Part shown: in pieces, positions 29,401-49,259 of the stretch
How positions within the stretch are numbered: the first letter of the stretch is position 1
Layout of the letters: each line of letters starts with the position of its first letter
Assembly (NCBI RefSeq): GCF_964204865.1
Contig: NC_135255.1
Location: 12,586,001-12,650,000 of the forward strand
Length of the DNA: 64,000 nucleotides
From: Styela clava
Lineage: Eukaryota
Reading direction: 5' to 3'
The notes under the pieces: generated by a model
Seen by the model: only the letters and a program-made list of their open reading frames with translations
The model's database searches: none
Told to the model about the DNA's origin: nothing
Made by a program: the position numbers and the translations under genes

Positions 29401-32400
29401 AATACCAGTCAATAAATATGATGCATTAACAGCAAATGACCAGTTTACCATGTATCTTTGTTAGGATAGGATTTATATATTTATCCTGGAGAGCAAAAAA
29501 CCAACAAAATTTAGGTTAGGTTTTTTCAGAGTTGAGGACTTTAGTCAATTGAAATCAAAATGCTTGTTAATCTGAAATTCGGAGTCAATTCAAAGCGGAT
29601 TTGAAAAAGGCCAAGTTTGTTTTAGAGTTGGGTGTAGACTTTCTCAGTTTCCGCAGCACTGATTCGAATTGATATACTTTTATCCTCTGATGCTTTCTTG
29701 TAATATGAATATCATATACTGATATTAAGTGATGATATGGCATAACTTGTGATATAAGAAATAGTTTTTACTTTTTGCTTCGTAATGTTTCACGAAATCT
29801 TGCATTACTATCGGACTGATTGTTTTTAGTCGATCATCAAGAATATATGGTTCGAGACATTCAAGAAACACAGTGTGAGCGATGCAGTCTGCCTTGAACC
29901 TTTCATATATTCTGTAGAAAATATTTAAACATAAAACAAGAGTGGTTCTGGCAGGGAAAACTATAAGATAATTCCTGATTTTTCCAATTATCAAGTGCTA
30001 CTTGAAAACACCTTATGAATAAATAGTTAAAATTAGCCAACTTAATAATAATGGTTGAATGTTAATATTAAAAATAATGGTTTGTGTTTTTTTGGGGATT
30101 GGAAATTTTTTCCCACAATGTACTTAGAATAGTAATTTAATTTAATTTACTTGCAATTGATTGCTTATCTTCATTTCTTAATTATACAGAACACAAGCAG
30201 ATATTAATTACTAATGAAACTTATATATATTTATACCTGTCACACAAAACATCAATTCTGTTAATATGAAGACAATGATCAACACAAACTGGAACAACAT
30301 CCTTGAAAAATGCAATCAATACCTGAATATAGACAGTTCGAATTAATGGACGATTCAAATTCAACATGTTTTATTGCATCCACAATACCTATAAAAATCA
30401 TTATAAACTTACCTCCAACTTTCCATTATCAGGACATAGTTTTGTCATTGAAAGATCCACATATTCAATTAAGATATCAAGAATCTGAAAGCGAAATAAA
30501 TATTAAACAAATAAGCAACTCTAATGTAAGTGGTACAGATATTGACCTCTGTGAGACATGGGAATTTGATTTCAATTTGGCCAGAAATTAAACAGAAAGG
30601 TATATCTCGCATATAAGCTGACGGCCCTAAAACGGTGAGTTTATATAATTTCGCATATAAGCCGATGCTACAAATCATACCACGCTGTACATATCACATC
30701 AAATGGTTGCAGAAGAGCATTAAAAACTATTACAGACTGTTATCGTTGTCATAGCGTACCAAGCGCTGCTTCGTGTATGTGCATGCACTTATCATAAGAA
30801 CTTAGCATGTTTCGAGTTGTAGCTATTAGAATTAAAATTAGCATAATGTCATTTCGTTTGAGTAGGATCAGAGTTATGCGCGTATAAGCCTACCCTCTTA
30901 GTTTTTTAGCTTATATGCAAGGATATACGTAATATAAAACCAAGCATCTCAACTCCATGAACATCTCCTACTTTGTAATGAACAATATCAAGAAGTAAAT
31001 ACAAACAAAAAAATATGAATCAGTACCATTTCGGAGACAAGTTGTCTTCTTTTTTCCTGATCTACAGGTAGTCCTACGATAAAATTCAACAAGGTAATTA
31101 TGAGGCTTTTTCAGAAAAAAACAGAATATGACGGTAAATCCGGTAATTTGCAGAATGAAACAAACCAATTAGAAGAAAAATTACTATTACAGAGAATGGC
31201 ATGTTATAAATATGTAATTATTAGATATTTAACTTGAACAATATTATGGGTGTTTTGATTCACAAATTTGAAATTTACAGTTACCCAGTACCAATATTCA
31301 AATTAATTGTGCCACATATTATCCAGCATTCAAAAATCAAAAAGATGAGTTTCAACATCGTACAACTGGCAAATCGTGTTGTATTTTTCTTCTGTGCGTA
31401 TGTAGCCTACATAGAAAATTCCTAAAATGCTTCATGACTAGTAAATAGCACAAATCAAAATAAAATACCGAGAACAGATTTGGCAGTTCCATTATAAAAC
31501 GTCAATGCAAGTTCCAAAGCTCTCTGATGTCCATTTGGCCAACCGAGTGATGTACGAATTCTATCGTTCCATTGTCGAACTTTGGTTGCATACACGCACA
31601 AGTCACCCAGAAGTAATACTGTACCGTTATAAGAAATCATTGAATGATAACATGTCTGTTCACCAATAGCAGCCTGAAATGTGACAAATTGTGTTAATGA
31701 TAAACGTTAATACGTCGGGTATAAACTGATCTATAATTCCTATTTCTCGATTCCAAAATTTTGTATTCGGGTGTAAACTTTTTCCAACTCCACAGTCCTG
31801 TTCGAACTAATAGAACATGAAAAATGATAGTTAGTCAAATTAAGATTATCATATATCAATACTTTATCATTTCAAAAACAAAGATAAATATCACATTCTA
31901 TTACAGTCTATCATTACTAGAAATGCAGTATTTATAAAATTTACTTATGCCAATACTGGAAATGGCCAAGATGACCTAGTTTTGTGATAAAATGGTGTGT
32001 TTTTGAACTAACCATGCATTCCGTGACAAATTTTAATTCCTCAAGTTATTGTATGAATTTTAAAACACAAATAAATACAACATTCATTACATTGATAATA
32101 AAATTATAAATATAGGTAAAGATCTGTTTATCTGTCTAAGATGTTTTTAAATTCGATTTCCTTTTGTGTATGCCAATTTCAATTATATTCTACTTTTATA
32201 GAATTACGAAATATTGTCTCTCAAGATTGTCCAACCATTTTTTGCCATTGGATAAAATGGAGTATATAATAAAAAATAGTTTCATCATACATGTAACGAC
32301 ATTCATACCAGTGCCTTGCTGACATTTCCTCCTGTAGCGATTGATTTGAAGGTAGCACTGCTGTATACCAAGTTGACGTTTTCCAATAAAATTGTTTCAA

Positions 32401-35400: not shown

Positions 35401-38400
35401 ATAATTAAAAAACAAAACATACCTAATTTTAAACTTATAACCATTATTGATGAAACTCCACACAAACCTGAAATTCAATTCAAACACTGATCCACCACTG
35501 TCATTACAAACTGCTAATGTAGGATCATCAGTAAACTGAAAGAGAAAAACCCACATTAGATAGTATACAAAGCAAGCTTAAGGAACAGTTGTTCGCTAGC
35601 GAAATGAAGCAATAGGTATAAAAATAATAGTGAGCATAGCTATATATTTTTCAGAATGAATGACAAATACACATTAGAATATTTGTGTAAACACACATTG
35701 AAATCTAAGCCAGGGGTAGGGAGCTCATTCAGCTTTGGATTAGAAGTCCTTCAAAGTACCTAATCCTCAACTTTGAACACCAGAAATGGCTAAAACTATA
35801 TAAAAAAAACATCCCAAATATAAATTATTTTCGAACAGAAAACAAAAATGAAGATATGTGACAATTTAGAGAAGTTTTCATTCGTAATAACTTGAAATAT
35901 TAACAATAAAAGTCAAAACTTAAGCTTTTTTTTCATTTTGTTAGTCTACATATGTAGTAGTTGATTTCATTTCAACAATCCTTGACTAACCTTAACATGT
36001 AAAACAGAAGATCCTGGAGGATGAGCATCTGTTATTGTTCGGAGTAATTTCCCTGATTTCACGTCATACATGAGTATCTGTCCTCTTGCATATCCGACTA
36101 GTAGTCTGTCGCTATCCATATTGAATGCCAATGCAGTCACAGAACCATACTTGCTACCAACACTGACGCTACCCAACACATGAACTAACTTCTGATCATT
36201 ATCTGTGAGGAATATGAGACATAGTGGAGTTACGAATAGAATTTATGATAATCTATGAAGCTCTAGTCATACTGTAGATATGAATTTTAACTTACCAAAT
36301 ACTAAAGCAATTCCATGAGCAGTTCCAATGGCTATCAACTGAGAAACTGCCTGTAAAAAATATATTCAATCTTACAGTACTTTTACATATAAGAACCTAT
36401 TAAACATTCGAAAATGGCATATCTATATACAAAAATTGAATGTAACATTTTAAGATTTCTTCCATATTAATCTTTCCAATATATAAATATTTTAAATCTG
36501 TGAAGTGACTCTTCATTGAAAAGGGGAATTAAACTGTAAGAAACAGAATCCAAACAAAAACTTGTGACACAACTTCAGCAACCCGCAGTCCAAATAACGG
36601 AATTTCCCGTTAGGCTGCCTTTTCATCTAGCTAAAAATTTTACCTTATATTTAGATGTGAATTACAGAATTTAAGTAACTAAGACTGACTCCTTTCTTAT
36701 AACAACATAACATACCAATGATGTTGGCTTTCCAGCATTGATTCTATCAGCAGATGACATGATATGATTTGACAGAGCTTGCATTCGGTAAAATGCAAGA
36801 ACAGGTCCATGGAATTGTGGAGCATCTTTTTTCTTTACACTGAAACAATAAAAAACAAGCTTAATTTAGAACGAGGGGCCAGTCATGTCAGATGTATTTG
36901 CCAACCAAACAACAACCAAAAATACAGCACATGAATCCAACTTTTACTAAAAAGAATGGAGCTTGATCTTGTGAGTTGTGTCACTTCATACAATATAACA
37001 TATATAATTTTGGAAATATTCCGGAATTTAGCATAGTCAAATGTTTAGATTTTCACAAAATTCAAAATAGAAAAGTGAACTATTGACGAATAATACTTGC
37101 ACTAGACCCAGTAGACTGACTTCTACAGATAGCGATTTATTCCTATAACCATGAGAACCCATTACAATAGAAATATGCCTATAATGATGACAACCTATTG
37201 AAGATCTCATTCGGTTATTTTTCTTCAAAGACACGATATTAGGAAAAATTCATATTTGGTTCAATTCTAGATCACCTTCTGAGCTGATTTTATAATCATT
37301 TATTTTAATATCGTTGGTTTCATACCTTGAAGCCTGACTGTCTCCACTTTTGATTGATGTTGTTTCTAATGATTTCAGAACACTCAGGGATGCCATCTCA
37401 CTTTTCTTAAGATAACCATTTGATATGTTTTTCTCTGGAGTTCCTGACAAAATGTGAATAGTGAAAACAAGGTGCTATTGCACATAAGCTCATGTCAAAG
37501 AGAGAGAAGGCATGTATGTAACTAAGGAAAAGTTGAGTAAAATAGAATCAATAAAAATAGAGCGTACATTGGTGCTCATCTGACAAACATAGAAAAAAAA
37601 GTAAAGCATATTTTTCGCCCACAGCTTTTTGGATAATAATATGAAGAAACTAAAAAAAATGGGTATTAATAAAAATAGAACTAGACTTATTCGCAAAGTC
37701 TGCTTATTATGTGGGAAATACGGTATTCTTTTATAAAGATGATACATCAAATAGTGTAGTGAGATTCTTTATCAGTGTCACCTCACAATTTTCATATCAC
37801 CTGCTACAAGCGATAAAGTAACAAATCGCAAAAAACATATTCAAGCAATTATATAAATGTTGTTACCTGTAGATGTGGGCGAAAAACCATTGGTGATATT
37901 ATCCAACAACGACACATTATCTTCAGTCTCACTTTCAGCCTCTTTCAAAATACTTTCTAAGGAAGGTTCTTCAACATCAGGAATGTCAAACTCTGTTGGA
38001 TCAAGCTGCAAAAGAAATTGATTTGTAAACATTAACCCATTTTATACTCCATACATACTTATGATATATCCATAGCCAGATCTGTGACATTTAATCGAAG
38101 CTGACCTTTCTATAATTGATGGAGCTACCAGAAATTTTAGTGGCTTCAGCTCCCAACCATCGAATTATTTTTTCCCATGGCTATGAAGCCCAGCTCTGTA
38201 GTTAAAAAATGAAGCTCAGAGTCAGAGCCATTGTGATTTTTAACCAGTCTTTCAGTCCTGGCTTATATTTCAATGCTTGTTAATATAAATATGTAGCCTA
38301 TCTAATTATGCATACATATTGAAGTGTATTTAAAATTATTGTGTTGGGTCCATACACAAATGAGTACCATACGAGAATAACCCATTGTAATTTGAGGTCT

Positions 38401-38661
38401 GGAAAAAGAAGTTGATAACTACTGCAAAATATCAAAGTGTAAAAAATGGAATATATTTTACTCAACATAGCAGCTTGACCATATTAATCAAAATGACAAT
38501 TCATATAACCCTATTGAAAATCATGTAACTATTACTAGCAAATAACTGTAAAAGTAAACACTATATACAGAGAATATCTGTTAAATATAAAAGGACTTCA
38601 TCAAACTCACCTCTTCTAAATCTTCCAGAATATTCCCATTACTAGTTTCAAGCTTGTCCAT
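11443..38661 (-). CDS. VPS8: Vacuolar protein sorting-associated protein 8 (CORVET subunit), ~36 exons
   Basis: GT-AG exons traced by hand, phase-consistent where checked: ATG 38661 MDKLETSNGNILEDLEE; EFDIPDVEEPSLESIL; IAIGTAHGIALVF; LLRTITDAHPPGSSVLHVK; FTDDPTLAVCNDSGGSVFELNF; VFLECLEPYILDDRL; LCWSHGLYDAI; KLWFPLLD; GEIKEILLGMLETYQYEKTLL; CAAC..HESC; last exon 11556-11443 ending DFKLSVAAPARFF*. These match recalled metazoan VPS8 motifs. Confidence 0.93.
12531..12868. mobile_element. Tc1/mariner-pogo type MITE (TA TSD) in a VPS8 intron
   Basis: TACCATATTTGCTCGTTTTGTAGCCCG ... CGGGCAGTAAAACGATCATATACGGTA TIRs; internal GGCCCTTATTCAAG-like subrepeats. Confidence 0.7.
12950..13978. mobile_element. 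Non-autonomous hAT element in a VPS8 intron
   Basis: TAGGGATGGG...CCCATCCCTA termini; exact 8-bp TSD TAAAGAAT (12942-12949 and 13979-13986); subterminal GACTCGAATCCGAGTCC repeats. Confidence 0.88.
16491..17950 (+). mobile_element. Degenerate pogo/Tigger (POGK-like) DNA transposon
   Basis: Left TIR TACCGTATATCCTCGCGTATA. Broken transposase: MSYACSFKLKVVAAAKNTSNEEAAKNFGVDKSNIRRWRK (HTH), GNMDETPM, FTVVLSCTADGAKLPTMVIFKRK, KGWMDEE, LQPLDVSLNRPFK, IKKSFIKCCISNNLDG; multiple frameshifts and stops; right end approximate. Confidence 0.88.
18333..20250 (+). mobile_element. Degenerate piggyBac transposon, tandem copy A
   Basis: TTAACCTTTTTTTTCCG possible left end; DKLYKIRPLL, ISIDESLISFKGR, YNIHMGGVDLSDQ and C-terminal Cys-rich domain CAVC...MCIKCEVHLC...CFEEYH; fragmented by deletions and stops. 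Confidence 0.88.
20712..20803 (-). pseudogene. Duplicated 3' half of VPS8 exon 23220-23055 (pseudo-exon with intact donor)
   Basis: 20712-20803 is nearly identical to 23055-23146 and keeps the CAG|GTATA donor and the following intron sequence. Confidence 0.9.
20801..22610 (+). mobile_element. Degenerate piggyBac transposon, tandem copy B
   Basis: Highly similar to copy A (ORFs 20781-21296 and 21654-22097); right end CGGAAAAAAAAG-TTGA approximately complements the copy A left end. Confidence 0.88.
22620..23011. mobile_element. Tc1/Tigger-type MITE (second copy at ~20257-20668)
   Basis: TACGGTGATACC ... GGTATCACTATA termini with TA flanks; part of the duplicated unit. Confidence 0.65.
24961..25170. 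mobile_element. Merlin-like MITE, family B copy 2
   Basis: Reverse-complement homolog of 10126-10328; degenerate TSD TGAAAAAC/AAAAAAAC. Confidence 0.7.
25371..25673. mobile_element. hAT (Charlie-like) MITE
   Basis: CATTGGTTCTCAAAC ... GTTTTGAGAACCACTG termini; GC-rich subterminal motifs. Confidence 0.65.
30600..30931. mobile_element. pogo-derived MITE
   Basis: CTCGCATATAAGC subrepeats; right end GCTTATATGCAAGGATATACGTA resembles the reverse complement of the 16491 TIR. Confidence 0.6.
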
Positions 38662-38685
38662 CGTGCTACAATCAGATCATTTCAG

Positions 38686-38705
38686 CTATGGAGCAACATT
38701 TTATT
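38686..38705 (-). promoter_or_regulatory. SART1 poly(A) signal abutting a candidate VPS8 trans-splice acceptor
   Basis: AATAAA at 38705-38700; ttgctccatag acceptor with AG at 38687-38686 (alternative ttgtag at 38667-38666); VPS8 ATG at 38661. Confidence 0.55.
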
Positions 38706-38992
38706 TTAACTATCAAATAATAAATAATAAAAAAAGATCGAGCGTAATAAAGGTACAAACGTAGGATCTAAAAAAAGGACAACTAGATTGCGAAAACTTA
38801 TATCACAAAGTAAAATACATGTATAATGCATGTTATCATACCAAGATGTTATGGCAAAGTCAATTGTAATACACCACATCACACTCAATTTTCCTTGTTT
38901 TCCTGAAGCTATTCATAATAAATCTAAGATCAGAACCAGATAAGTTACTGCTTCAGATATCAATGAAAATAGGCAGTAATTTTACAAGCAAA

Positions 38993-39611
38993 AACCGCCG
39001 CAGTAAAACCAAAGTACTAATGGACTTTTAGGATTTTCTTTTCACTGTGGATCAGGGTCATCTTTTGGTCTAGGATTCAAATATGTACTTAAAACAAACC
39101 AGCTTATGTACAGTTTTTAAGCAAAAGTAATTGATCAAGAACTAATTTCTGTTACAGGCTGATAGACATACGACAATCATGTACGGTATATATAGCCACA
39201 GTAAAAACAAGATAGCCTAAGTCAAATTTTTTTAGAGATGGGCTTTTTTGATTTTTTATAACAAGCACCTGTTGTTTTTTGGATTCAATAGCTCGGCATT
39301 TGATGAGTGGAATATTGTGATACTATCCGACTTTCGAGGGTAGAAATAATGCCAATATGTCCTAATTCCAGTGTTGTTTTGAACCCTAAAAGATTTTAAA
39401 ACTTTGTCCAAAATGGGGGGTAGAATATATACATATAGTGGTGTGTTTTAGGCGTCCCCAAACACACAGTCTTAGGTGCCATATGTAATATGATGTTTTG
39501 TAAAGAATATCAGATTCCTATTTTACCACATTAATTACAGAACTGAGAATAACAAAATTGTGATTTTCTCAAAATGTGACATAAACTAACTTGGTTTTAC
39601 TGCGTCATGGT
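38993..39611. mobile_element. Old TIR element in the SART1-VPS8 interval
   Basis: CGCAGTAAAACCAA (38999-39012) and TTGGTTTTACTGCG (39591-39604) form an inverted pair. Confidence 0.55.
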
Positions 39612-40631
39612 GTAATAAGTAGAGCTGGGAATAGTGACCCGTTAACTACTATTAGATGGTTAATGGTTACAAGTAATTTTAAACATCAACAGACATCCAA
39701 AGGAAGTAAAATTAATTCGCATGTATCAGTATTAAAATTCCAAATAATTAATGTATATGAGTGACCAAGCAGATCGTCTAGTTAATAGATGGACATTTCT
39801 GATCCATATACAATTTTCAACATTCCAAACTAATATTTATGGCAAACAGTTTTATAATCATAACATAATATAATAAGTGATATTTCACCCAATTTTCAAA
39901 GGTAAAAGTGTTTTCATAATAACTCCCAGCCCTGGTAATGAGTCTTCTTATGTGCTATCAAACTAGATTGAGATACCTGTACAGTTAGTACTTCTGGTAT
40001 TACTTTCCTATGAAATTTGAAAAATTTACAACAAATATCTATACAACATTTCTAAAATAACTTATCAGTGTCTATTCACCATCACCAAATAATAATCTTT
40101 ATAACCCATACAAAATTCAATCTTGTTGATTGAGGCGAGAAATTTAGAACAGAATAGCAGGTTTAAAAATAATTAAAATATTATCATATTATGTCCGATA
40201 ACAACCACTGACAAAAGAATATCCTAATGCAAAACACCCAACATAAGCAGCGGATCACATGGTAATTTTCATTTTTAACATATAAATCAAGTCAAGTCAG
40301 GGCAGTTTCTAGCAGGGAGTACATTTCTAATGTTATCAAAACAAGAGTTGTTGTGGGCATGTTAACAATAATTTAGGCATTTAAAATGATATGGCCCAAA
40401 ATAACATCAAAAGATTTTCATAATATGATCTGCCAATCAACTGCTACAAAGAAGGCATAAGATAATCAGAATGACAAAGTTTATGGTACCCCTGCAAGTG
40501 TTTTGTAATAGGTATTGGAAGCTGCAATGATTTACGGCTCAACAGAATGTCCCGACAACAACACAAAAATATTGATTTGCATCGATGAAAATTGATTTCA
40601 TTTTTCATATGTCTCACAATTATAATACTAA

Positions 40632-42977
40632 TCATTTCTTCAGCCCTCCACCACCAGCTTGCAATGTTTTACCAGCTCCACTTAGAACAATATAAGGACT
40701 TGCTTCGCTTTGTAATTTTTCTTTCATCATTGCTACTGTGTTAAGTGGTGTATCAGTCGAACTCATTTTCAACATCATATCTTCTTCTCCTTTCTTTTTT
40801 TGTCGTTTTTCGAGTTTCATTTTACCCGATCCTTTGCCGTGAAACCTGTGAGATAATTTTCTGAAAGCTTCTTTTGGATTCATTAATCGACCTCCTTCAT
40901 CAACATACTCGATAGTTACTTTAGGTTTATAATTTTTCTTTTCTTCAAAATCCATTACAATTCCACGATCGTAGCGATTACTACGGTCTTTCGAGTATTT
41001 TTCGTGAGCGTATTTATCCAAATGATCAACTGCGTTTTTGTCTTCAATGGAATAGTTTGCAGAAAGCAGGTCAATATTTTTACTAGTTATTGTGACTGAG
41101 CTTTTTGGTTTTTCTTCCATCAGGTAACCCTTTCTCGTGGCTAGTTTTAGTGCACCGGCTAAGCCGCCTACAGCAAGAGGCTCGGCTTCAATAGGTGCAT
41201 GTCTATCATCGACAGGTTCTGCCTGTGTAACTGGCTTAACTTTGGCTTTATCGTTCACAAAATTCCATCCTGACGTAACTTCTTCTTCTTCTTCATCTTC
41301 CACGTCCATATCAACGCTGTCGTCCATGGAAGTCTCTTCCATAGGCACTTCTTTAATAACATTCAAATCTGAGGCGGTTCCGAGCTGACGACAAAATTCA
41401 TCAGTTGAATTTAAAGATATAGTTGTAGAATAATTGGCCATTGGATTTTCAAATGAAACTTTATTTAAAAGGTCTAAATGTTCGACGACTTTACTGGCAC
41501 CGACATCCTCAGTAACCATGTTTGATTTAACCTGTTTTGCCCGTCTTGCTTTGTCCAATGCTTTTTGAAGTTCATTACTGGCATCATCCTCGTCAAAAAT
41601 GACATTTTTCTTCGAATTCATTAAAGTTGTAGATGTTATACTTGTGTCATCCACTTTTGCAGATTCAATACCTTCATCCCATCCAGGTATATTTCCTCGT
41701 TGATTTCGACTTCTAGAACCAAAATCAGATGATGTTGAACTACCCGGTAGAGGTTGTAGATCGTCTGGTTTTAGATCACGTTTTCTTACTTTTCGCACTT
41801 TCTTTTTTCGTTTTTTGAACTTTGTCATTTCCTCTTCAGTCAAATATTCAGATGCAATTTTGAGTTGAGGGAGTGCTAAGCTGACTCCTTTAGCTTTAAT
41901 TTCATTTTTCATCATCATTTTTTGTTGTTCCCAAGTCGTATCAACTTTTCCATAATTACCGATAGTAAATTTCTCTTGCTTGATTCCTTCAATTTCTTCA
42001 TCATATTTCGAAAGCATAGACTTTTGTTTAAAAAATCCCATTTCATCAACCTCTTCCTCATCATAAGCTTTGTATCCAGAACCTTTGGACTTCACGTCCA
42101 AATTTCGTTTTGCTTTTTCAGTATCAACCAAGTTTACACCAACAAGAACATCATCCTTATCTTCTTCAAGTATATTTTTATCTTCGAGAGTCAAAATTTC
42201 TGATCTTCCTTCTTTGAACATTTCTAAGGAGTGTTTTACAGTAATGCCTTGCAAATCACGAGATGTGTATGAGTCTTTCTTTACATCGGCAAATTCATTG
42301 TCTATTAAACCACCAATACCAAATTCTGCATCCATTTTAGCCATTTCTTGTTCTCGTTTTTCAGCCACCTTTTTTTGTTTTTCCATTTTTCTACTTCTTT
42401 CTACCCAAGATACCGCATCATTTTCATCTTCATTTTCTTCTCCCAAAGTCTTGATTTTCCCCATTTTTTTGTTTAAGTTTCTTTTTTCTTTAATGGCTCG
42501 TAGTTTTTCTCTAATATCATCCTGTTTTTTCTTTTCCCACAAATCTTCAGCAGGAGCATGAACAAATTCTTCTTTCTTTGATTCGGTTGCATTACCGGAA
42601 GATCCACCGACGTCGAGAGGTTTGAGTCCCAGTTTTAACCTCAACTTATTTGTTTCTTCAATACTGAGTGAGTCACCTTCGCCATTAGCTGATGTTGGAG
42701 TGGGTTCAGCATGATGTTGTCTTGACTTACCATTACGTTCAGATTCCAACTTTTGGGGGGATTCAGAATCTCGATCTCGTTCACTTTGTTTCTTGTGTTT
42801 TTTCTTATGTTTTTTTTGTTTAGAATATGATTTTTCTGTTTCTACATCGTCATGACGTCTTCTTTTTTTTTCTTCTGGACTATGACTTTCATCTCTCTCT
42901 TCATCATCATATGCAGGACTTGAACGCTTGTGCTTTCGATGTTTATGGTCTTTCTTATGCTTTTTAGATGATCCCAT
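40632..42977 (-). CDS. SART1: U4/U6.U5 tri-snRNP-associated protein 1 (Snu66), 781 aa, intronless CDS
   Basis: MGSSKKHK start; HIND motif SLSIEETNKLRLKLGLKPL; C-terminal PKEAFRKLSHRFHGKGSGKMKLEKR and MSSTDTPLNT...PYIVLSG. Confidence 0.97.
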   Translation of the reverse strand: MGSSKKHKKDHKHRKHKRSSPAYDDEERDESHSPEEKKRRRHDDVETEKSYSKQKKHKKKHKKQSERDRDSESPQKLESERNGKSRQHHAEPTPTSANGEGDSLSIEETNKLRLKLGLKPLDVGGSSGNATESKKEEFVHAPAEDLWEKKKQDDIREKLRAIKEKRNLNKKMGKIKTLGEENEDENDAVSWVERSRKMEKQKKVAEKREQEMAKMDAEFGIGGLIDNEFADVKKDSYTSRDLQGITVKHSLEMFKEGRSEILTLEDKNILEEDKDDVLVGVNLVDTEKAKRNLDVKSKGSGYKAYDEEEVDEMGFFKQKSMLSKYDEEIEGIKQEKFTIGNYGKVDTTWEQQKMMMKNEIKAKGVSLALPQLKIASEYLTEEEMTKFKKRKKKVRKVRKRDLKPDDLQPLPGSSTSSDFGSRSRNQRGNIPGWDEGIESAKVDDTSITSTTLMNSKKNVIFDEDDASNELQKALDKARRAKQVKSNMVTEDVGASKVVEHLDLLNKVSFENPMANYSTTISLNSTDEFCRQLGTASDLNVIKEVPMEETSMDDSVDMDVEDEEEEEVTSGWNFVNDKAKVKPVTQAEPVDDRHAPIEAEPLAVGGLAGALKLATRKGYLMEEKPKSSVTITSKNIDLLSANYSIEDKNAVDHLDKYAHEKYSKDRSNRYDRGIVMDFEEKKNYKPKVTIEYVDEGGRLMNPKEAFRKLSHRFHGKGSGKMKLEKRQKKKGEEDMMLKMSSTDTPLNTVAMMKEKLQSEASPYIVLSGAGKTLQAGGGGLKK

Positions 42978-43003
42978 CGTATTTATTATAATTAAGAATT
43001 AAC

Positions 43004-43034
43004 CTGTAAATATTAAAGTAACAGTTCGTTTATT
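43004..43034 (-). promoter_or_regulatory. C1orf131 poly(A) signal abutting a candidate SART1 trans-splice acceptor
   Basis: AATAAA at 43034-43029; tttacag acceptor with AG at 43005-43004, 26 nt upstream of the SART1 ATG. Confidence 0.6.
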
Positions 43035-44102
43035 CAATTAAGGCTAGGCCACATATGGATAGTAAATCAAAAATGTAATACATACATCAATGACGTACCA
43101 AATTCAACAGTATTACAATGCATTTTTTTTTAATATGCCCAACAAAGTTTTTAACATTCGCATGAAATTGTTATATTCGGCAACAGGTCTCAAATCGATG
43201 ATATCATTTTGTTGGGCGAAGTTTCCATCAAAATGAATGAATATTCAATTTCAATATTATTGATATACTTTAAAATTGTGAAATAACCATTCACAAAACT
43301 TGCCGTCTCGTTCCATGCATTAATTTATTTCCTTTTTTTATACTTGAAAATCTGAGAATTTATTGACATTACAACAAATAGATGCTAGTTCAACTCATTT
43401 GGTCCAAAGTTAAACATGATAATATACAGTGTTTTTGTATGAAACCAATACAAATGAAAATCATTGGAATAACATTAATCGTTCCACGTTGATTCATTTT
43501 TGTATACTACACTTGTAAAAGAGTATAATTATATGTTAGTTCACTGATCAACTACACATTCCTCAAACTTGCAAAAGTATCAATAGAAATGCAGTATGGT
43601 ACAGTTCTCCAATTTCAAGAATAACCCCAACATTAGAAGACATCAATTATACCAGTGAATGCAAACCGCTCCTTTATGAGACAGTCTGGGCCTCCATATC
43701 GCCAAACTGGCACTGTGCAAATAAACTGAAGGATACACAATCTGAAAATGTCACCATTGACCATTGGATTCCCAAAAATAATACAATTTACCAAAAAAAA
43801 AAAATTTTACTGTAGGATTCAAGAGTTTTTAGCAAAAAAATGTTGACAGAAATATTTTGGTCACATGATGGCAGACACACGTAAAATTATTATCGAGACA
43901 AGCATGGCGCAAATTACCGCCGTACCAGACACCCTCGTTACAGAGACAAATAGAGTGTTAGTTTTATTGAACCAAATATAGACAGATCTTGGCATCAGGA
44001 GACTGTGCTCTATTGGAAATGACTTTCATGATCTATATCTGAGAATTGGTTTAAAATGTAATGCATCAAGTCAATGGGAAATATCAAAATAAGCAGAATT
44101 TA

Positions 44103-44807
44103 TTATCGGCGCCTGTTTACAGATTTAATATCTTTTGATGAAAGTTTTAAAACTCCATCCTTATATTTTCCAATTTGCGGATTCAAACTTTTATCGCCTT
44201 GTTTCCAGAATTTCGGCATGCCACTCGTCTTTTCTTTATATTCGGTTCTATTGTTCGACAATATATTATTGCCAGAACTTGTATCTTGTTTCAATCTTTT
44301 TTGTTCTTCCATGAGAATTTTATAATTAACATATTTCCGTTTTGTCGGTTTTGCTCCAAGTTTTATTGCTCTTTTTCTTTCATGTTCTCTCTGTTCTTCT
44401 TTCGAAAATGCCTTCATTCCAAACGAGCCAACGCTGAATTTTAATTTTTCTAAAACTTCCGAAGAATTTAGTCTTTCATTTGTATATTTAGACTTTGGAA
44501 TATTGAACTGTGAGTCTGTACCAACAATAGTTGGTGATGCTTTTTTTATTTCCGGTTCTTCATTTTTAGTTTTTTTACTTTTAAATATGACAATTTCAAC
44601 TTCCTTTTTTAATTTATTATCATTTTCCTCTTTCGTCATCACCGTGGATGGAATTATGGGGGTATTGGGTTGTGTTTCTTTAGGCTGTGTTTCACCTAAA
44701 AATTCTGAAGCATATTTATCCAAAATACTTAAAATTTTATCATTATCTGCTTCCTTCATGGACACTTTGTCCTTTATTTCCATCTTATGGCGCCTACGTT
44801 TAGTCAT
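44103..44807 (-). CDS. C1orf131: C1orf131/FSAF1 homolog (DUF4602; SSU processome assembly factor), 234 aa, intronless CDS
   Basis: ERKRAIKLGAKPTKRKYVNYKIL and QIGKYKDGVLKLSSKDIKSV match recalled DUF4602 motifs; acceptor tttttcag at 44824-44823, 15 nt before the ATG. Confidence 0.9.
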   Translation of the reverse strand: MTKRRRHKMEIKDKVSMKEADNDKILSILDKYASEFLGETQPKETQPNTPIIPSTVMTKEENDNKLKKEVEIVIFKSKKTKNEEPEIKKASPTIVGTDSQFNIPKSKYTNERLNSSEVLEKLKFSVGSFGMKAFSKEEQREHERKRAIKLGAKPTKRKYVNYKILMEEQKRLKQDTSSGNNILSNNRTEYKEKTSGMPKFWKQGDKSLNPQIGKYKDGVLKLSSKDIKSVNRRR

Positions 44808-45135
44808 TTTCGCGATTCAAGCCTGAAAAATAAGAGAAACAGTACCGTAAATGATATGAAATTAGATGATACATTTTTGTTATAAATTGATTTCAAAATT
44901 TGTCTGTATGTCACTTGTGCACATAAATTTGTGTGTTTCCATGCCACTGGAGCCCTTTAAAAATCGAAATTTACACCACTGCGACATACAGGTACCCTAC
45001 TGCCCTCTTGAAGCGTTGCACTAGAAAGTACCGTAGTCCTGTAGTTGAGCTGTCCGCCTCCCGTGCAGAGCACTGTACTGAGCAGCGGGCCCCCATACTG
45101 AAGTATGTATTCAGCTATCCCTAGTCCTTTTACAC

Positions 45136-45818
45136 CATTCGTTTTCAAACTGGGGTCCGCGGTCGCTTAGGGGTCCGTGAAGCGATTTTAGGGAGACCGC
45201 GAGACAGCGTTAATCTCGGCACAGAAGCACTTTGATCTGAAGTAAAGTTTTGATGTCTTGCTTTTACAGTGTTTCTACAAAGCATGACACGCTCTAACAA
45301 AGACATTATTACTGTGTTACGTAACAAATGTTGGGGAAAGTGGCAAGTACCGTAAATCGGAGTGTGTGGTTTATGGAAGGCGCGCGCATCTGATTAAAAA
45401 TAAGACCCGCGGCCCGCCATAAAAAATAAATTTAGATATAACAATTCATATGTGAAATTTGGTTTTGCTGTGATAGTTCTGGAGGAAAAAAAGACCATAG
45501 TTGGACCGTCCAATCCCGATGTCACTAAAACTGCTTCATTCCATTTGCAACAACTTACGAATGTGCGGGCATCTTTTTCTATGTTACTCACTATTAAAAC
45601 AAGATATGAGAGTTGCATTATCCAAAACAGAACCCAAGGTAGACTAACTAGTGGGAGCTGAGCAGGCGCACACATCTCATTGAACACTCTTAATGTCATT
45701 CAATAGATGAATGCTTGATATACTGCGTTGTTATAATTTCTTTGGTGGACCACGAGTCATCAGAAAAATTGAAAGGGAACCGTTATGCATTATTTTTCAA
45801 AAAGTTCGAGAACCACTG
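45136..45818. mobile_element. hAT (Charlie-like) non-autonomous element
   Basis: CATTCGTTTTCAAACTGGGGTCCGCGG... left end and GTTCGAGAACCACTG right end. Confidence 0.5.
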
Positions 45819-47896
45819 TTCTACACAATCCGTAGCCTGGTGGTAGGTACCTACTACAGCTACAATCGTGACAATCAATCAGCCGTTCACCTACACAGTG
45901 TCACCGTCTACATTAGGTTGTGGTAACGTGTATTTGAGCTTGAGACAAAACAATAAAATTTACAACATCACATTTTAGGATTTAGTTTCGCTCACGATGA
46001 ACTGTCATTCACACAAAAAACTGAAATATATTTATCTGCACCAAAGTGACTAGCCTATAGTCATTTTGATTTGCACTCCTGCTTGTCAAAAAAACGGAGT
46101 CATGCTGCTCGGAGTCCTGAATCCCTCTGTGATCAGCACCGGTGTGCATTTGGTGATGAAATATAAAAAAAATATTCACGAAAATTGACCCACGCCTCTC
46201 AGTCCAGATCAGTAGTGAAAGCAATTTAGTGTTTTTCAGTTTATGTTGAAAATGTTGATTCTGACCGCCATGTATCTGTTTATGGAAATCTGAACTGAGA
46301 CACCGAGGGTTGTGAAATTTCTGTTCCGGTTTCAACTCCATTAATGGCAAAAAATATCCGATCCCGAATCCACATATTGTGTTTTATTATGTAACAATTA
46401 TTCCATATATACATATGTTAACTTCGTCATGGAGGGTTTTTATTTTGTCAAATTTTATATACGATAAAAATATTATTAACTGTGAAAAAAGTATTGCAAC
46501 TAAAAATGGTAAACTGTTAATCCGCATGATGAAGAGGTGGAAATTTACAAAAAGCTCGTTTTTTAAGTGCAATGATATTTACGTAATATTGTGTTTATAT
46601 AAATGTGATGTTTTTATTATAGTAAAAAAATCCACAGCCCTGGATATAGAAAATAGACAAAAATCGATGTAAAAGATCAAGCTGAGTACGTAAAACTTTA
46701 ACAGCTTATGTTTCGTGAGTATACACAAGTGGATACATAAAAGTCATTTCGTTTTGTAGTGACTTTATGAGTGTGGGTTGTGCTATGCAGTGGTTCTAAA
46801 CATTTGCAAGCCTTCCGAACACCTGGGCTATTCTGCAAGCCAGTATGTTCCCCAGCTTTTCATTTTAGGGGGGGGGGGGTGTTTCGAAGTTTAGGGGGTG
46901 GAAAATAATTTGCTATTGCGATGAAACTATTTGTACTTTCAAAAAATTGGTATGTATTTAAGAAACAATGTACATGAGGGGGCTCCCAAGTTGATTGACG
47001 GCGAGCCAAAATACACAGCAGAATAAAAATGTAGGGCCAGAAAAGGCGAGCGAAAAGTGCGCGACGACACGGCTGGGGTTCACGGCTGAAAATTTTGAGA
47101 AATAGGCACCAAAATAGGTTCTAAGCTTGATTTTAGATACATCTAGCATCGCAGTTTGTTATGTAATGAAATTAATAATTATAATATTTAGCTGATAGAA
47201 TTCCCGAGGAATAAATAACAAGCCCGGCTTTCAGCAAGTAATTTACGACTTATAGTGACTAATGAAGTTACCTGCTCATCTAGCATATGGCATCGTATGA
47301 ATGGCTACTTATGGCTTGTTTTGTTACACATTTCACATTTTTTGAACATGATCGTTTGACTTTTGTACGAATCAAGCGATGAATTAAATTTCGAAATACG
47401 CGCGTCAACTGATCATAATGGCGCATAATGTTGTATTCCTTCAGAACTGAAATTTTAGGGGGTGTGTTCACCCCCTATAGGGGGGGGGGGTGTTCACTGC
47501 TGCATTCTTCTGCCGAACCTCATATTATTGAACATTTCAATTAGCGCAATCGGAAACTTATAATAAGTAACCTAATTTTTTGTTATATATCAGTGGTTCC
47601 TACCCTAGAGGATTTTAGCACTCGTGACCTCTTGTTCACCATCTCAAAAATACGAGCATGCGTTGCGCCGTAAATATATACTACTGCGGTTGCGCACATT
47701 CTAGATAGGCCATCTCGATTTACTTTGATAAAAGCAAAGTAATTGTCGTTCTATTTTCGTTTCTTGGGAATATTAGGAATTTAGAAATATTTTCTACGTC
47801 TACCTTGCAGTCATGTGAAACTTTCGTTATATGTAGACAAGGTTCGACCGGTATCTTTAGGTCAAATGGCCTGCCGACCTACTACAAAGCTTAGAA

Positions 47897-48240
47897 TTAG
47901 GATAGGATTTACATATTTATCTCGGGGGAGAGAAAAGCCGATAAGACGGCTTATCCATATGGCGAACCACGGCCTCTCGTCCGGTTACCATTCCAAGTCG
48001 GGTATGGGATTAATTTTACTGTATTGTTTGTTTTCGGAAGCATGGACTTGGTGGTGGAGGAAGCCGTAACCGACCAGCGGTTACGTGAACCACCCAACGA
48101 CAGGAAGGAGTCCAGCAATCCTCTTGCACATAACCATCCTTACATGGGATTCGAACCTGCGAACCCACGCAGAGTAATTAGATGTGCGGTGGCGAGCGTA
48201 TTCTTAACGCTTAGCCCGCTGAGCCACACCACCGCGCCGC
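47897..48240 (-). mobile_element. tRNA-derived SINE
   Basis: Minus-strand Pol III A box TGGCTCAGCGG and B box GGTTCGAATCC, unique body, ATCCT-repeat tail; a tail fragment recurs at ~29461-29500. Confidence 0.8.
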
Positions 48241-49259
48241 GCCAATTTGCGGAGCAAAGTGGCATTCATAATGTTATTTTGATTTGTAAATCCCAAGTCC
48301 CATTATAACCCAACAATTCATGCACGAGAAAGTGAAAACACCATGTGAAATGAAATGAAACTAGTTAGACCGGAAGCATAAAGTATGCAGAGAAAATTGC
48401 ATAAAAATCAATTTTGACACCGGTATCGTAGCCCCTTCCAACTGTTCTGTGGCAGTCAATAATAGTCATTGTTGCGTCTAATGATTTTTTTCAGTGCGAA
48501 TTCTGCAACGAAATGTTCTTTGCCACAAATTTATCACTTGCTGAAGTGTTTCGTTAGGATTTTGAATGGTTGTTCCCTATGACTCAGCGCATACCGTAAC
48601 TGCGCGTCTTCAACTATCCGTTTACAAGTATCTAGTTAAAACGTGTAAAATCTTGGTTGTGTATTATATTTTTCAAATAAAACGATGACGACAAAATCAA
48701 TACGAAGATGCGATAAAACAGTAAAATAACTTAACTCAAAACGAGGCAGGAAGCTTGTTTATTACGGTTGAGTTGTTTGCGGTCTGAAGGTTAAGCGTCG
48801 AGTACCCAAATATCGGAACATAATTATCAAATCGTGGCAAATACGTCGCGCGACCAATCAACGCTTGAGCGCTCGTCATAGAGAAGTACATAAAAATCTT
48901 ACGATACCTGTGGCGATATTATATATGATTTTTTGATGAAGTCTGCTGACATGAAAAGTTGTAACCGCCAATGACAGAGCTACTAAAACTTAAATCTGAG
49001 CGAGTTATTTAAACGTGTAAGTTTGTATATCTGATATGAACTATTGATATTTTTTCATAATTGGAAGGCTGGGTAACAGAGAAATTTCCTGATATAGAAC
49101 TGCTTCAAAGGACCTTTTTCGAAACCCTGGAACAGCTCAACCGAGCCCCAGGGGTTAGATCGAATCCAGGTTAAAGTAGACCGTACTATAATTTCGCAGA
49201 GCAGAAATATAATCGCTATATTTTTGAAATAGATCACATAGTTTACTAATATTTCAGAC

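What the first reader, a model, noticed from the sequence alone, without database searches (positions are those of the whole stretch)
38661..44824. Candidate three-gene SL trans-spliced operon C1orf131 - SART1 - VPS8 with zero-length intercistronic junctions
Seen: three co-oriented genes, each with a splice acceptor within ~26 nt upstream of its ATG (AG at 44824, 43005, 38687). For the two downstream genes an AATAAA lies 23 nt and 12 nt upstream of that AG; none was seen before the first gene's acceptor. Established: ascidian operons are resolved by SL trans-splicing, with the upstream poly(A) site coinciding with the downstream acceptor. Inference: one promoter near 45-46 kb drives a >33-kb polycistronic pre-mRNA linking ribosome biogenesis, spliceosome and endosomal tethering genes, with long 3' UTRs (~1.1 and ~1.9 kb). 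Caveat: by rough composition estimate AATAAA falls in such a window a few percent of the time, and one VPS8 cis acceptor (23220) also has one.
Basis: partly seen in the sequence, partly recalled or inferred. Interest (0 to 1): 0.75.

Follow-up and report, generated by a model that had tools for sequence, protein, structure and literature searches.

The report
Sea-squirt three-gene operon candidate
Three unrelated housekeeping genes in a sea-squirt genome lie head-to-tail like the operons already known from sea squirts; RNA assemblies confirm the first gene-to-gene junction but not yet the second.

Summary
On the minus strand lie intronless FSAF1/C1orf131 (44807-44103), intronless SART1 (42977-40632) and multi-exon VPS8 (ATG 38661). 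Each ATG follows an AG acceptor. AATAAA lies 23 and 12 nt before the second and third acceptors.

RNA contigs support junction 1. One run's SART1 contig starts with the last 11-13 letters of this genome's spliced leader, joined at 43004|43003. The leader ends in TTTTGATTAAG and is encoded by a tandem gene array on another contig. The FSAF1 contig of the same run ends at 43004, and a second study's contig ends at 43005.

Junction 2 is not shown. In three of four runs, contigs run unspliced through the VPS8 acceptor into spliced VPS8 exons. No leader-bearing VPS8 contig was listed, and the SART1 contig stops 63 nt short. The only AATAAA or ATTAAA in the 1.9-kb SART1 tail is the one at the acceptor.

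A single promoter, and the absence of internal ones, could not be tested.

Verdict: a probable Ciona-type operon, a new member of a known kind. Its tails are unusually long and carry transposons, and the junctions have canonical poly(A) signals. This scan has already noted many operon candidates elsewhere in this genome.

The parts
44823..44824 (-). AG acceptor before FSAF1; the exon starts at 44822
   Evidence: Sequence. The X1 contig record 3 is 1832 letters, with letter 275 lying on 44559. If colinear it reaches 44833, 11 letters beyond the exon start. Those letters were outside the laid stretch and were not seen.
44103..44807 (-). FSAF1 (C1orf131) coding sequence, 234 aa, no intron, single copy in the genome
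   Evidence: ORF; Pfam PF15375 1.4e-15; 1 match in the own genome.
44099..44104 (-). AATAAA overlapping the FSAF1 stop codon; a possible proximal poly(A) signal
   Evidence: Use not shown.
43004..44102 (-). FSAF1 3' untranslated tail, transcribed through to the SART1 acceptor
   Evidence: X1 record 3 lies on 44559..43004 with 1 other letter and then has 2 letters that do not fit the genome. X2 record 13 ends at 43005.
43580..44022 (.). Interspersed repeat of about 440 bp inside the FSAF1 tail
   Evidence: Own-genome DNA search: 610 candidates in the first look, 40 scored; 45 matches besides the query's own place, at 68-88% identity; the long ones (69-82%) span query positions 81-523. Short foreign contigs touch 43673-43704 and 43941-43977.
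43029..43034 (-). AATAAA 23 nt before the SART1 acceptor
43004..43005 (-). SART1 trans-splice acceptor AG and apparent end of the FSAF1 mRNA
   Evidence: X1 record 2 is 22 non-genomic letters followed by 43005..38749. Read on the gene strand, the letters next to the exon are TGTTTTGATTA+AG, the 3' end of leader variant a.
40632..42977 (-). SART1 coding sequence, 781 aa, no intron, single copy
   Evidence: ORF; Pfam PF03343 2.9e-113; 1 match in the own genome. Nearest named relatives are ascidians at 49-56% identity.
38686..40631 (-). Interval between the SART1 stop and the VPS8 acceptor, probably the SART1 3' tail; transcribed
   Evidence: X1 record 2 joins the SART1 coding sequence to 38749. 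X5 record 25 joins 39388 to spliced VPS8 exons. X2 record 9 joins 38851 to them. The 3' end itself is not mapped.
38999..39604 (.). MITE-like repeat(s) with inverted ends, inside the SART1 tail
   Evidence: Inverted repeats I1 and I2. Dispersed matches to query positions 935-1540, about 39092-39697. A joint 39022>39548 with long unlike flanks in 3 of 4 runs is read as another copy elsewhere.
38700..38705 (-). The only AATAAA or ATTAAA between the SART1 stop and the VPS8 acceptor, 12 nt before the AG
38686..38687 (-). Candidate VPS8 trans-splice acceptor (alternative AG at 38667-38666)
   Evidence: Sequence only. Contigs of X1, X2 and X5 run through it unspliced.
38611..38685 (-). VPS8 exon 1 (ATG 38661); intron 1 is 38610-38006; exon 2 starts at 38005
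   Evidence: In 4 of 4 runs the letters beyond 38611 are those of window 37976-38005. Donor GTGAGT and acceptor ...tttgcag.
29725..29994 (-). VPS8 exon-bearing ORF with the start of the Vps8 central TPR domain
   Evidence: Pfam PF12816 5.3e-10. Exons were searched one by one and not joined.

Best explanation
This is an ascidian operon of the Ciona type, in which neighbouring genes abut with no DNA between one mRNA's end and the next mRNA's start.

Proposed mechanism. RNA polymerase II starts somewhere in the 5.5 kb upstream of FSAF1, which is the only co-oriented gene start there, and reads through FSAF1, SART1 and VPS8. At each junction one AG serves two competing reactions. Either the upstream message is cleaved and polyadenylated there, guided by an AATAAA 12-23 nt upstream, or the spliced leader is joined to the next base to make the capped downstream message. 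On this view one precursor molecule yields one or the other at each junction.

Shown. SART1 mRNA carries the leader at 43003. FSAF1 RNA runs 1.1 kb past its stop and ends on the acceptor's G. RNA runs continuously from the SART1 tail through the VPS8 acceptor into spliced VPS8 exons.

Inferred. Poly(A) addition at 43004 and near 38686, leader addition to VPS8 and to FSAF1, the single promoter, and the mutual exclusion.
For: (1), run X1. A 4279-letter contig begins with 22 non-genomic letters and then lies on 43005..38749. An 1832-letter contig lies on 44559..43004 and then has 2 non-fitting letters. The two do not share the 30-letter overlap that I expect (recalled, from no call) for a graph break on a continuous genomic path. 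A run of another study (X2) also has a contig ending at 43005.

(2) The letters next to the SART1 exon, TGTTTTGATTA+AG, match the leader exon of a tandem gene array at G000:C4:23.30-23.48 Mb. That stretch holds 31 of the 53 exact TTTTGATTAAGGTA matches in the genome. The sequence there is ...ATTATTGCTGTTTTGATTAAG|gtaag. The 11-mer is absent from the window (0 exact matches), so it is not a local exon.

(3) Only one joint is listed in 38560-44559, and it belongs to a repeat. No cis-spliced 5' exon joins either acceptor.

(4) The runs are RNA: VPS8 intron 1 is removed in 4 of 4 runs.

(5) Contigs link the SART1 coding sequence to 38749 (X1), and link 39388 (X5) and 38851 (X2) to spliced VPS8 exons. 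The two transcripts therefore overlap or are one.

(6) AATAAA lies before both downstream acceptors, about 0.0014 by chance, and is the only such signal in the SART1 tail.

(7) FSAF1 and SART1 are intronless and single-copy. Passages of PMC2760879 give 38% single-exon genes in Ciona operons against 15% elsewhere.

(8) The nearest upstream gene, gamma-glutamyltranspeptidase, is on the other strand from about 50.4 kb.

(9) Passages of PMC1488885 and PMC2760879 define Ciona operons by exactly this abutment.
Against: No listed contig bridges 43004/43005 in any of the 4 runs, so no dicistronic FSAF1-SART1 RNA was seen; 49 laid records were not listed.

For VPS8, no leader-bearing contig was listed. 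Contigs pass the acceptor unspliced in 3 of 4 runs (X1 to 38704, X2 to 38851, X5 to 39388).

The X1 SART1 contig ends at 38749, 63 nt before the AG, and no poly(A) was seen anywhere.

The leader was seen on SART1 in 1 of 4 runs only. In X2 and X3 the contig stops at 42941, and X5 has nothing laid over 42760-43559.

The first 11-13 of the 22 extra letters are a copy of SART1 coding sequence (42917-42905), so that contig tip is partly an artefact.

Parts of the tails have no laid contig in some runs: 39560-40159 in X2 and X3, and 39960-40359 in X5.

All data are assembled contigs, which cannot show true RNA ends, strand or level.

The 1.1-kb and 1.9-kb intervals leave ample room for internal promoters. 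Ciona outrons average 438 bp and peak near 100 bp (passages of PMC4691747).

Gene order in other tunicates could not be checked.
Confidence: 0.5

Rival explanations
1. A two-gene operon plus an independent neighbour. FSAF1 and SART1 are co-transcribed and resolved at 43004|43003. VPS8 has its own start inside or upstream of the SART1 tail (38.7-39.4 kb or beyond). Either it is not trans-spliced at 38687, or only a minority of its RNA is. The AATAAA at 38705 simply ends SART1.
For: Contigs of 3 of 4 runs carry genomic sequence upstream of the VPS8 acceptor joined to spliced VPS8 exons, and no leader-bearing VPS8 contig is listed. The acceptor's pyrimidine tract is weak, at 45% pyrimidines in 20 nt against 60% and 80% for the other two. 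Outrons of a few hundred bases are normal in Ciona (passages of PMC4691747).
Against: An mRNA keeping 727 nt upstream of the ATG would carry 11 upstream ATGs, so these contigs look like precursor RNA rather than message. Contigs drop minority forms, so absence of a leader form proves little. The single poly(A) signal of SART1 sits 12 nt from the AG, as at junction 1.
Confidence: 0.25
2. Three separate transcription units that overlap. Each downstream gene has its own promoter inside the upstream gene's long tail. Leader addition only trims each gene's own outron. The upstream gene's poly(A) site falls at the acceptor because the AATAAA happens to lie there.
For: The 1.1-kb and 1.9-kb intervals are far longer than typical outrons (passages of PMC4691747). 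No bridging contig is listed at 43004/43005. Contig depths of the three genes do not keep one ratio across runs, though the tool warns that contig depth cannot rank genes.
Against: The FSAF1 contig ends on the very G of the acceptor in X1, and within one base in X2. The Ciona literature takes this as the mark of co-transcription, because the acceptor's branch point and pyrimidine tract lie inside the upstream message (passages of PMC1488885). Two AATAAA-acceptor couplings have a chance of about 0.0014. Ciona operon genes are also not tightly co-expressed (same paper).
Confidence: 0.2

Closest known systems
Ciona intestinalis operons without intercistronic DNA (Satou et al. 2006, PMC1488885; Satou et al. 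2008, PMC2760879; passages read). They include three-gene examples such as DTL-URM1-CHERP.
   Same: Same-strand housekeeping genes with unrelated functions. The downstream gene receives the one short leader at an AG just before its ATG. The upstream mRNA ends on that AG. Intronless genes are over-represented. Expression is not tightly coordinated.
   Different: Here a canonical AATAAA precedes both junctions, whereas 16 of 18 Ciona junctions lack it. The upstream tails are 1.1 and 1.9 kb and carry transposon copies. The leader differs: it ends TTTTGATTAAG, and the gene array holds three variants per 831-bp unit. The second junction is not shown at the RNA level.
Caenorhabditis elegans SL1-type operons (as described in the discussion of PMC1488885; the primary papers were not read)
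   Same: No spacer between the upstream poly(A) site and the downstream trans-splice site. AAUAAA is present in the upstream gene. The general leader is used rather than a specialised one.
   Different: A nematode system with different leaders, and a rare class there. No shared ancestry is implied, and nothing here tests the mechanism.
Oikopleura dioica operons (as cited in PMC1488885 and PMC7986045)
   Same: A tunicate with a single leader used for both monocistronic and operon genes.
   Different: Oikopleura has 23-30 nt spacers, a 40-nt leader, and no AATAAA in upstream cistrons.

Membership tests
Ciona-type SL-resolved operon | Neighbouring genes on the same strand | tested here: met
   All three ORFs or exon sets are on the minus strand in the order FSAF1, SART1, VPS8.
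Ciona-type SL-resolved operon | The second gene's mRNA carries the spliced leader at the acceptor before its ATG | tested here: met
   The X1 contig carries the last 11-13 leader letters joined at 43004|43003. The leader is identified from the C4 gene array. Seen in 1 of 4 runs; the others have no contig reaching the 5' end.
Ciona-type SL-resolved operon | The third gene's mRNA carries the spliced leader | tested here: inconclusive
   No leader-bearing contig is listed. Contigs of 3 of 4 runs cross 38687 unspliced. Contigs drop minority forms.
Ciona-type SL-resolved operon | The upstream mRNA 3' end abuts the downstream acceptor (operationally under 100 bp), junction 1 | tested here: met
   The X1 contig ends at 43004 plus 2 non-fitting letters, and the X2 contig ends at 43005. 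This is contig-level evidence; the poly(A) tail was not seen.
Ciona-type SL-resolved operon | The upstream mRNA 3' end abuts the downstream acceptor, junction 2 | tested here: inconclusive
   The X1 SART1 contig reaches 38749, 63 nt from the AG, and other contigs continue across. The only poly(A) signal is at 38705. The true end is not mapped.
Ciona-type SL-resolved operon | Unresolved polycistronic RNA exists | tested here: inconclusive
   None is listed across 43004/43005. Contigs do cross 38686 into spliced VPS8 exons, but the tool states that a contig across two genes shows no single transcript.
Ciona-type SL-resolved operon | One promoter upstream of the first gene and none inside | not testable with these tools
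   No TSS data. A CpG profile of 44.8-50.5 kb shows no distinct island. The next upstream gene is divergent, from about 50.4 kb.
Ciona-type SL-resolved operon | The gene pair or trio is kept together in other tunicates (supportive, not defining) | not tested
The metagenome scan gave nothing. None of the best 120 SART1 relatives is a fused FSAF1+SART1 model. Ciona operon lists are in supplements, which were closed.
Spliced-leader RNA gene (the C4 array used to name the leader) | Leader exon followed by a GT donor, in a multi-copy tandem array | tested here: met
   L034 (3001 nt) holds 11 copies of leader|GTAAG: variant a x4, b x3, c x4, with an 831-bp period. Each follows a conserved upstream box. 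31 exact sites lie in 179 kb.
Spliced-leader RNA gene (the C4 array used to name the leader) | Short hairpin and U-rich Sm-like site in the intron part | tested here: inconclusive
   RNAalifold gives a 5-pair and a 3-pair hairpin before GTTATTTTATA, with 0 of 8 pairs compensatory. No Rfam family matched.
Spliced-leader RNA gene (the C4 array used to name the leader) | The leader is found on an mRNA whose locus does not encode it | tested here: met
   Seen on the SART1 contig. The 11-mer has 0 exact matches in the 64-kb window. This rests on one mRNA only.
C. elegans SL1-type operon | Nematode SL1 leader and nematode lineage | tested here: not met
   The nearest SART1 relatives are ascidians and the leader is Ciona-like. 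This is an analogy only.

The most novel reading that the evidence does not exclude
In this stolidobranch-like ascidian, operon junctions may be built differently from Ciona's. A canonical AAUAAA sits 12-23 nt before the trans-splice acceptor, at the end of kilobase-long, transposon-bearing tails. The cleavage/polyadenylation machinery and the leader snRNP would then compete for one AG and set the output ratio of neighbouring genes. The three leader variants encoded in every 831-bp repeat (a, b, c) might be used unequally, for instance one favoured at operon-internal acceptors. That would be a first hint of SL2-like specialisation in a chordate.
Probability: 0.12. Interest if true: 0.6.

Novelty: new member of a known kind. 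Interest (0 to 1): 0.3.

Why it matters
About a fifth of Ciona genes lie in operons, so one more ascidian operon is not surprising. The locus still has some value.

It gives contig-level RNA evidence, in a second ascidian lineage, for the abutting architecture in which the upstream mRNA ends on the downstream acceptor. It shows that such junctions can sit at the end of tails of 1 kb or more that contain transposons. Distance-based operon finders that measure from stop codons would miss them.

It also pairs the junctions with canonical AATAAA signals, which Ciona junctions mostly lack. That makes the locus a convenient place to test whether polyadenylation and trans-splicing compete for one site.

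Searches of the held paper library found no paper combining Styela with "spliced leader". Of the 15 papers listed (of 20 holding both terms) for Styela clava with "operon", none has either term in its title or abstract.

Tried and rejected
The 22 extra letters as a new or longer leader: rejected. The whole 22-mer has no genomic source; there is 1 hit with 2 mismatches on C10 and 0 in the window. A 15-letter version has 1 hit against 4 for the control. Its outer 13 letters equal window 42905-42917 inside the SART1 coding sequence. I read the tip as a chimera from reverse transcription or assembly, placed in front of a genuine leader remnant.

The Ciona leader as this genome's leader: rejected. 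The 16-mer from Table 1 of PMC1488885, with up to 1 mismatch, gives 133 matches against 44 for the control. The excess is an array on C3. There the motif ATTCTATTTGCATAAG is followed by TT rather than GT, in all 6 copies in 5 loci, and it lies just upstream of tRNA-Leu genes in a tRNA-Leu/tRNA-Ala array.

Total count of TTTTGATTAAGGTA as evidence: not usable. With up to 1 mismatch there are 518 matches against 1746 for the control. Only the clustering of exact matches and the gene structure count.

A local cis-spliced leader exon: rejected.

Rfam: no family matched, at gathering score in the window or at E up to 0.01 in the leader array.

Hidden genes in the two intervals: no ORF of 80 aa or more lies within them.

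VPS8 3' end and a possible fourth gene: 10 minus-strand ORFs between 235 and 8821 gave no Pfam match, so this is left open. VPS8 exons were searched one by one.

The metagenome scan gave 107 pattern matches, none a relative. The SART1 word search listed the best 120 of 975 hits, none with an FSAF1 domain. The Ciona operon lists (additional files of PMC2760879 and PMC7986045, Supplementary Fig. S3 of PMC1488885) may say whether Ciona's orthologues share an operon. Supplements were closed and I did not ask for them.

An earlier first-reader note (s1-819849) places leader relics 2.46 Mb away. I read that spot and saw no resemblance to the array's leader, so I did not use it.

A CpG profile upstream of FSAF1 shows no clear island. 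ARAGORN found no tRNA in 44800-50500, although a tRNA-like stretch near 48.0-48.25 kb caught my eye.

The name Styela clava comes only from earlier notes of this scan. Here I showed only that the nearest named SART1 relatives are ascidians.

Papers. For PMC1488885, PMC2760879, PMC4691747 and PMC7986045 I saw passages returned by 'find'. For all other papers I saw search listings only.

Full report
WHAT IS THERE. The window's minus strand carries three genes in a row.

Gene 1 is one uninterrupted ORF of 234 aa (44807-44103) matching Pfam FSAF1, the C1orf131 family (1.4e-15). Gene 2 is one uninterrupted ORF of 781 aa (42977-40632) matching SART-1 (2.9e-113) with a HIND motif. Gene 3 starts at ATG 38661 in a short first exon with its donor after 38611. 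Further down the same strand, an ORF at 29725-29994 carries the start of the Vps8 central TPR domain (5.3e-10).

Each ATG is preceded by an AG: 44824-44823, 43005-43004, and 38687-38686 (with a second at 38667-38666). AATAAA ends 23 nt and 12 nt before the second and third acceptors, and there is none before the first.

About 3.6-3.8% of minus-strand positions in this window have AATAAA 5-35 nt upstream (116 of 3090 AGs). Two of two is therefore about 0.0014 by chance. The AATAAA at 38705 is the only AATAAA or ATTAAA in the 1944 nt between the SART1 stop and the VPS8 acceptor. The FSAF1 tail has several: 43968, 43364, 43329, 43034, and ATTAAA at 43134. One more overlaps the stop codon at 44104-44099.

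WHOSE GENOME. The nearest named SART1 relatives are ascidians: Clavelina 56%, Ciona intestinalis 52-53% (two entries), Phallusia 52%, Ciona savignyi 45-49% (two entries). The next group, molluscs and amphioxus, lies at 41-45%. Earlier notes of this scan call the genome Styela clava; I did not test that name. Both intronless genes are the only copies in the assembly.

THE SPLICED LEADER OF THIS GENOME. The Ciona leader (16 nt, Table 1 of PMC1488885) is not used here as such. Its one-mismatch array on contig C3 is a motif upstream of tRNA-Leu genes and is followed by TT, not GT.

Of the 53 exact matches, 31 lie in 179 kb of contig C4, all on one strand, at spacings down to 831 bp.

Each 831-bp unit holds three leader-gene-like copies behind a conserved upstream box:
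- a: ATTATTGCTGTTTTGATTAAG|gtaag
- b: ATTATTCGCTGTATAATTAAG|gtaag
- c: ATTATTCGCTATTTGATTAAG|gtaag

L034 holds 11 copies in 3 kb. Variant c differs from the Ciona leader's last 13 letters at one position. A small hairpin and a U-rich stretch follow the donor, but no pair shows compensatory change, and Rfam has no matching family.

RNA EVIDENCE. All holders of the locus are assembled contigs of public runs. I laid four runs from three studies on 38560-44559, the 6000-letter limit, which excluded the FSAF1 5' end.

The runs are RNA. In 4 of 4, the letters beyond 38611 are exon 2 (window 37976-38005), so a 605-nt intron has been removed.

Junction 1. In run X1, a 4279-letter contig is 22 non-genomic letters followed by 43005..38749. 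The outer 11-13 letters are a copy of SART1 coding sequence 42917-42905. I read that tip as a chimeric artefact, not as a longer leader; the 22-mer has no genomic source.

In the same run, an 1832-letter contig lies on 44559..43004 and then has two letters that do not fit the genome. By arithmetic it begins 11 letters before the FSAF1 exon start. That is compatible with a leader remnant on FSAF1 too, but those letters lay outside the laid stretch and I did not see them.

A run of another study (X2) has a contig ending at 43005. X3's ends at 43031, and X5 has nothing laid there. No listed contig crosses 43004/43005.

Junction 2. The X1 SART1 contig runs on through the whole 1.9-kb tail to 38749. 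All three are spliced to exon 2. So RNA is continuous across the junction, as a precursor would be, but neither leader addition to VPS8 nor a SART1 end at the AG is shown.

An RNA keeping 727 nt upstream of the VPS8 ATG would carry 11 upstream ATGs, which argues that it is precursor rather than message.

The only joint listed in the stretch (39022>39548, in 3 of 4 runs, with long unlike flanks) belongs to a MITE-like repeat. No cis-spliced 5' exon feeds either acceptor.

THE LONG TAILS. Both intervals contain interspersed repeats. A unit of about 440 bp with hundreds of relatives lies at about 43580-44022. MITE-like elements with inverted ends lie at 38999-39604. No ORF of 80 aa or more lies inside the intervals. 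The tails are long partly because transposons landed in them, and they are transcribed all the same.

UPSTREAM. The nearest gene above FSAF1 is a gamma-glutamyltranspeptidase on the plus strand from about 50.4 kb, facing away. FSAF1 is therefore the first gene of the row. I could not place a promoter; there is no clear CpG island.

HOW IT MOST LIKELY WORKS. [quoted passage not shown] The acceptor's branch point and pyrimidine tract therefore lie inside the upstream message, transcription must cross the boundary, and one precursor can probably yield only one of the two messages (passages of PMC1488885).

By the operational definition used for Ciona's 1,310 operons (same strand, under 100 bp between gene models; PMC2760879), FSAF1-SART1 qualifies. 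SART1-VPS8 probably does too. The many single-exon genes in Ciona operons (38% against 15%) fit the two intronless genes here.

The difference is the canonical AATAAA before both junctions. In Ciona, 16 of 18 junctions lack it. In this respect the locus resembles the SL1-type operons of C. elegans, as that paper describes them.

WHAT REMAINS OPEN. Contigs cannot show RNA ends or single molecules. Internal promoters in the tails cannot be excluded, since Ciona outrons average 438 bp (PMC4691747).

I put 0.5 on a three-gene operon, 0.25 on a two-gene operon with an independent VPS8, and 0.2 on three overlapping but separate units.

NOVELTY. Operons resolved by leader trans-splicing are well known in ascidians, and this scan has already flagged many candidates in this genome. 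This is a new member of a known kind. Two modest twists may be worth a genome-wide look: poly(A) signals at the junctions, and kilobase-long, transposon-bearing tails that hide the abutment from distance-based finders.

Noticed in passing
G000:C4:23,304,100-23,482,914 (L028-L034): The spliced-leader RNA gene array has an 831-bp unit holding three leader variants (a, b, c), each behind a conserved ATAGAyyGTGCArCCGAATGrG box. Passages read from PMC1488885 report only one major leader in Ciona. Whether all three variants are used on mRNAs is unknown.
   Followed up: partly
G000:C3:24,847,565-24,961,794 (L018-L022): A tandem tRNA-Leu/tRNA-Ala gene array. Each tRNA-Leu(tag) gene is preceded by ATTCTATTTGCATAAG, one letter off the Ciona spliced leader and, by my recollection, containing an octamer-like ATTTGCAT. 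It is followed by TT, so it is not a leader gene. This is a trap for leader searches.
   Followed up: yes
window 42905-42917 and the 5' tip of an RNA contig of run X1: The SART1 contig's 5' tip is 13 letters of SART1 coding sequence placed in front of the last 11-13 letters of the leader. It looks like a template-switch or assembly chimera at the leader's 5' part.
   Followed up: partly
window 43580-44022: An interspersed repeat of about 440 bp, with 610 first-look candidates in the genome, sits inside the FSAF1 3' tail and is transcribed with it.
   Followed up: partly
window 38999-39604: Nested MITE-like elements with CAGTAAAAmCAA inverted ends lie in the SART1 tail. A transcribed copy elsewhere, apparently lacking 525 nt, gives a false joint 39022>39548 in 3 of 4 runs.
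   Followed up: partly
window 44099-44104: An AATAAA overlaps the FSAF1 stop codon. Contigs of three runs break at 44103, and contig depths of the tail are lower than those of the coding part. A proximal poly(A) site or a diverged second haplotype could explain either; the data cannot tell them apart.
   Followed up: no
window about 50,340-54,105, plus strand: Gamma-glutamyltranspeptidase exons (Pfam PF01019 on 4 of 8 ORFs tested) lie head-to-head with FSAF1 across about 5.5 kb.
   Followed up: partly
window about 48,000-48,250, minus strand: A stretch with tRNA-like box A and box B letters (ggctcagcgg ... ggttcgaatccc) may be a tRNA-derived SINE. ARAGORN called no tRNA there.
   Followed up: partly
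G000: L024-L027 (C1:114,886; C1:19,678,793; C2:11,645,849; C4:1,602,488): Dispersed single copies of the leader's last 16 or so letters plus gtaagct lie outside the array. L024 and L026 sit next to tRNA-like sequence. They may be relics of the leader-gene-targeting retrotransposons described in earlier notes.
   Followed up: no
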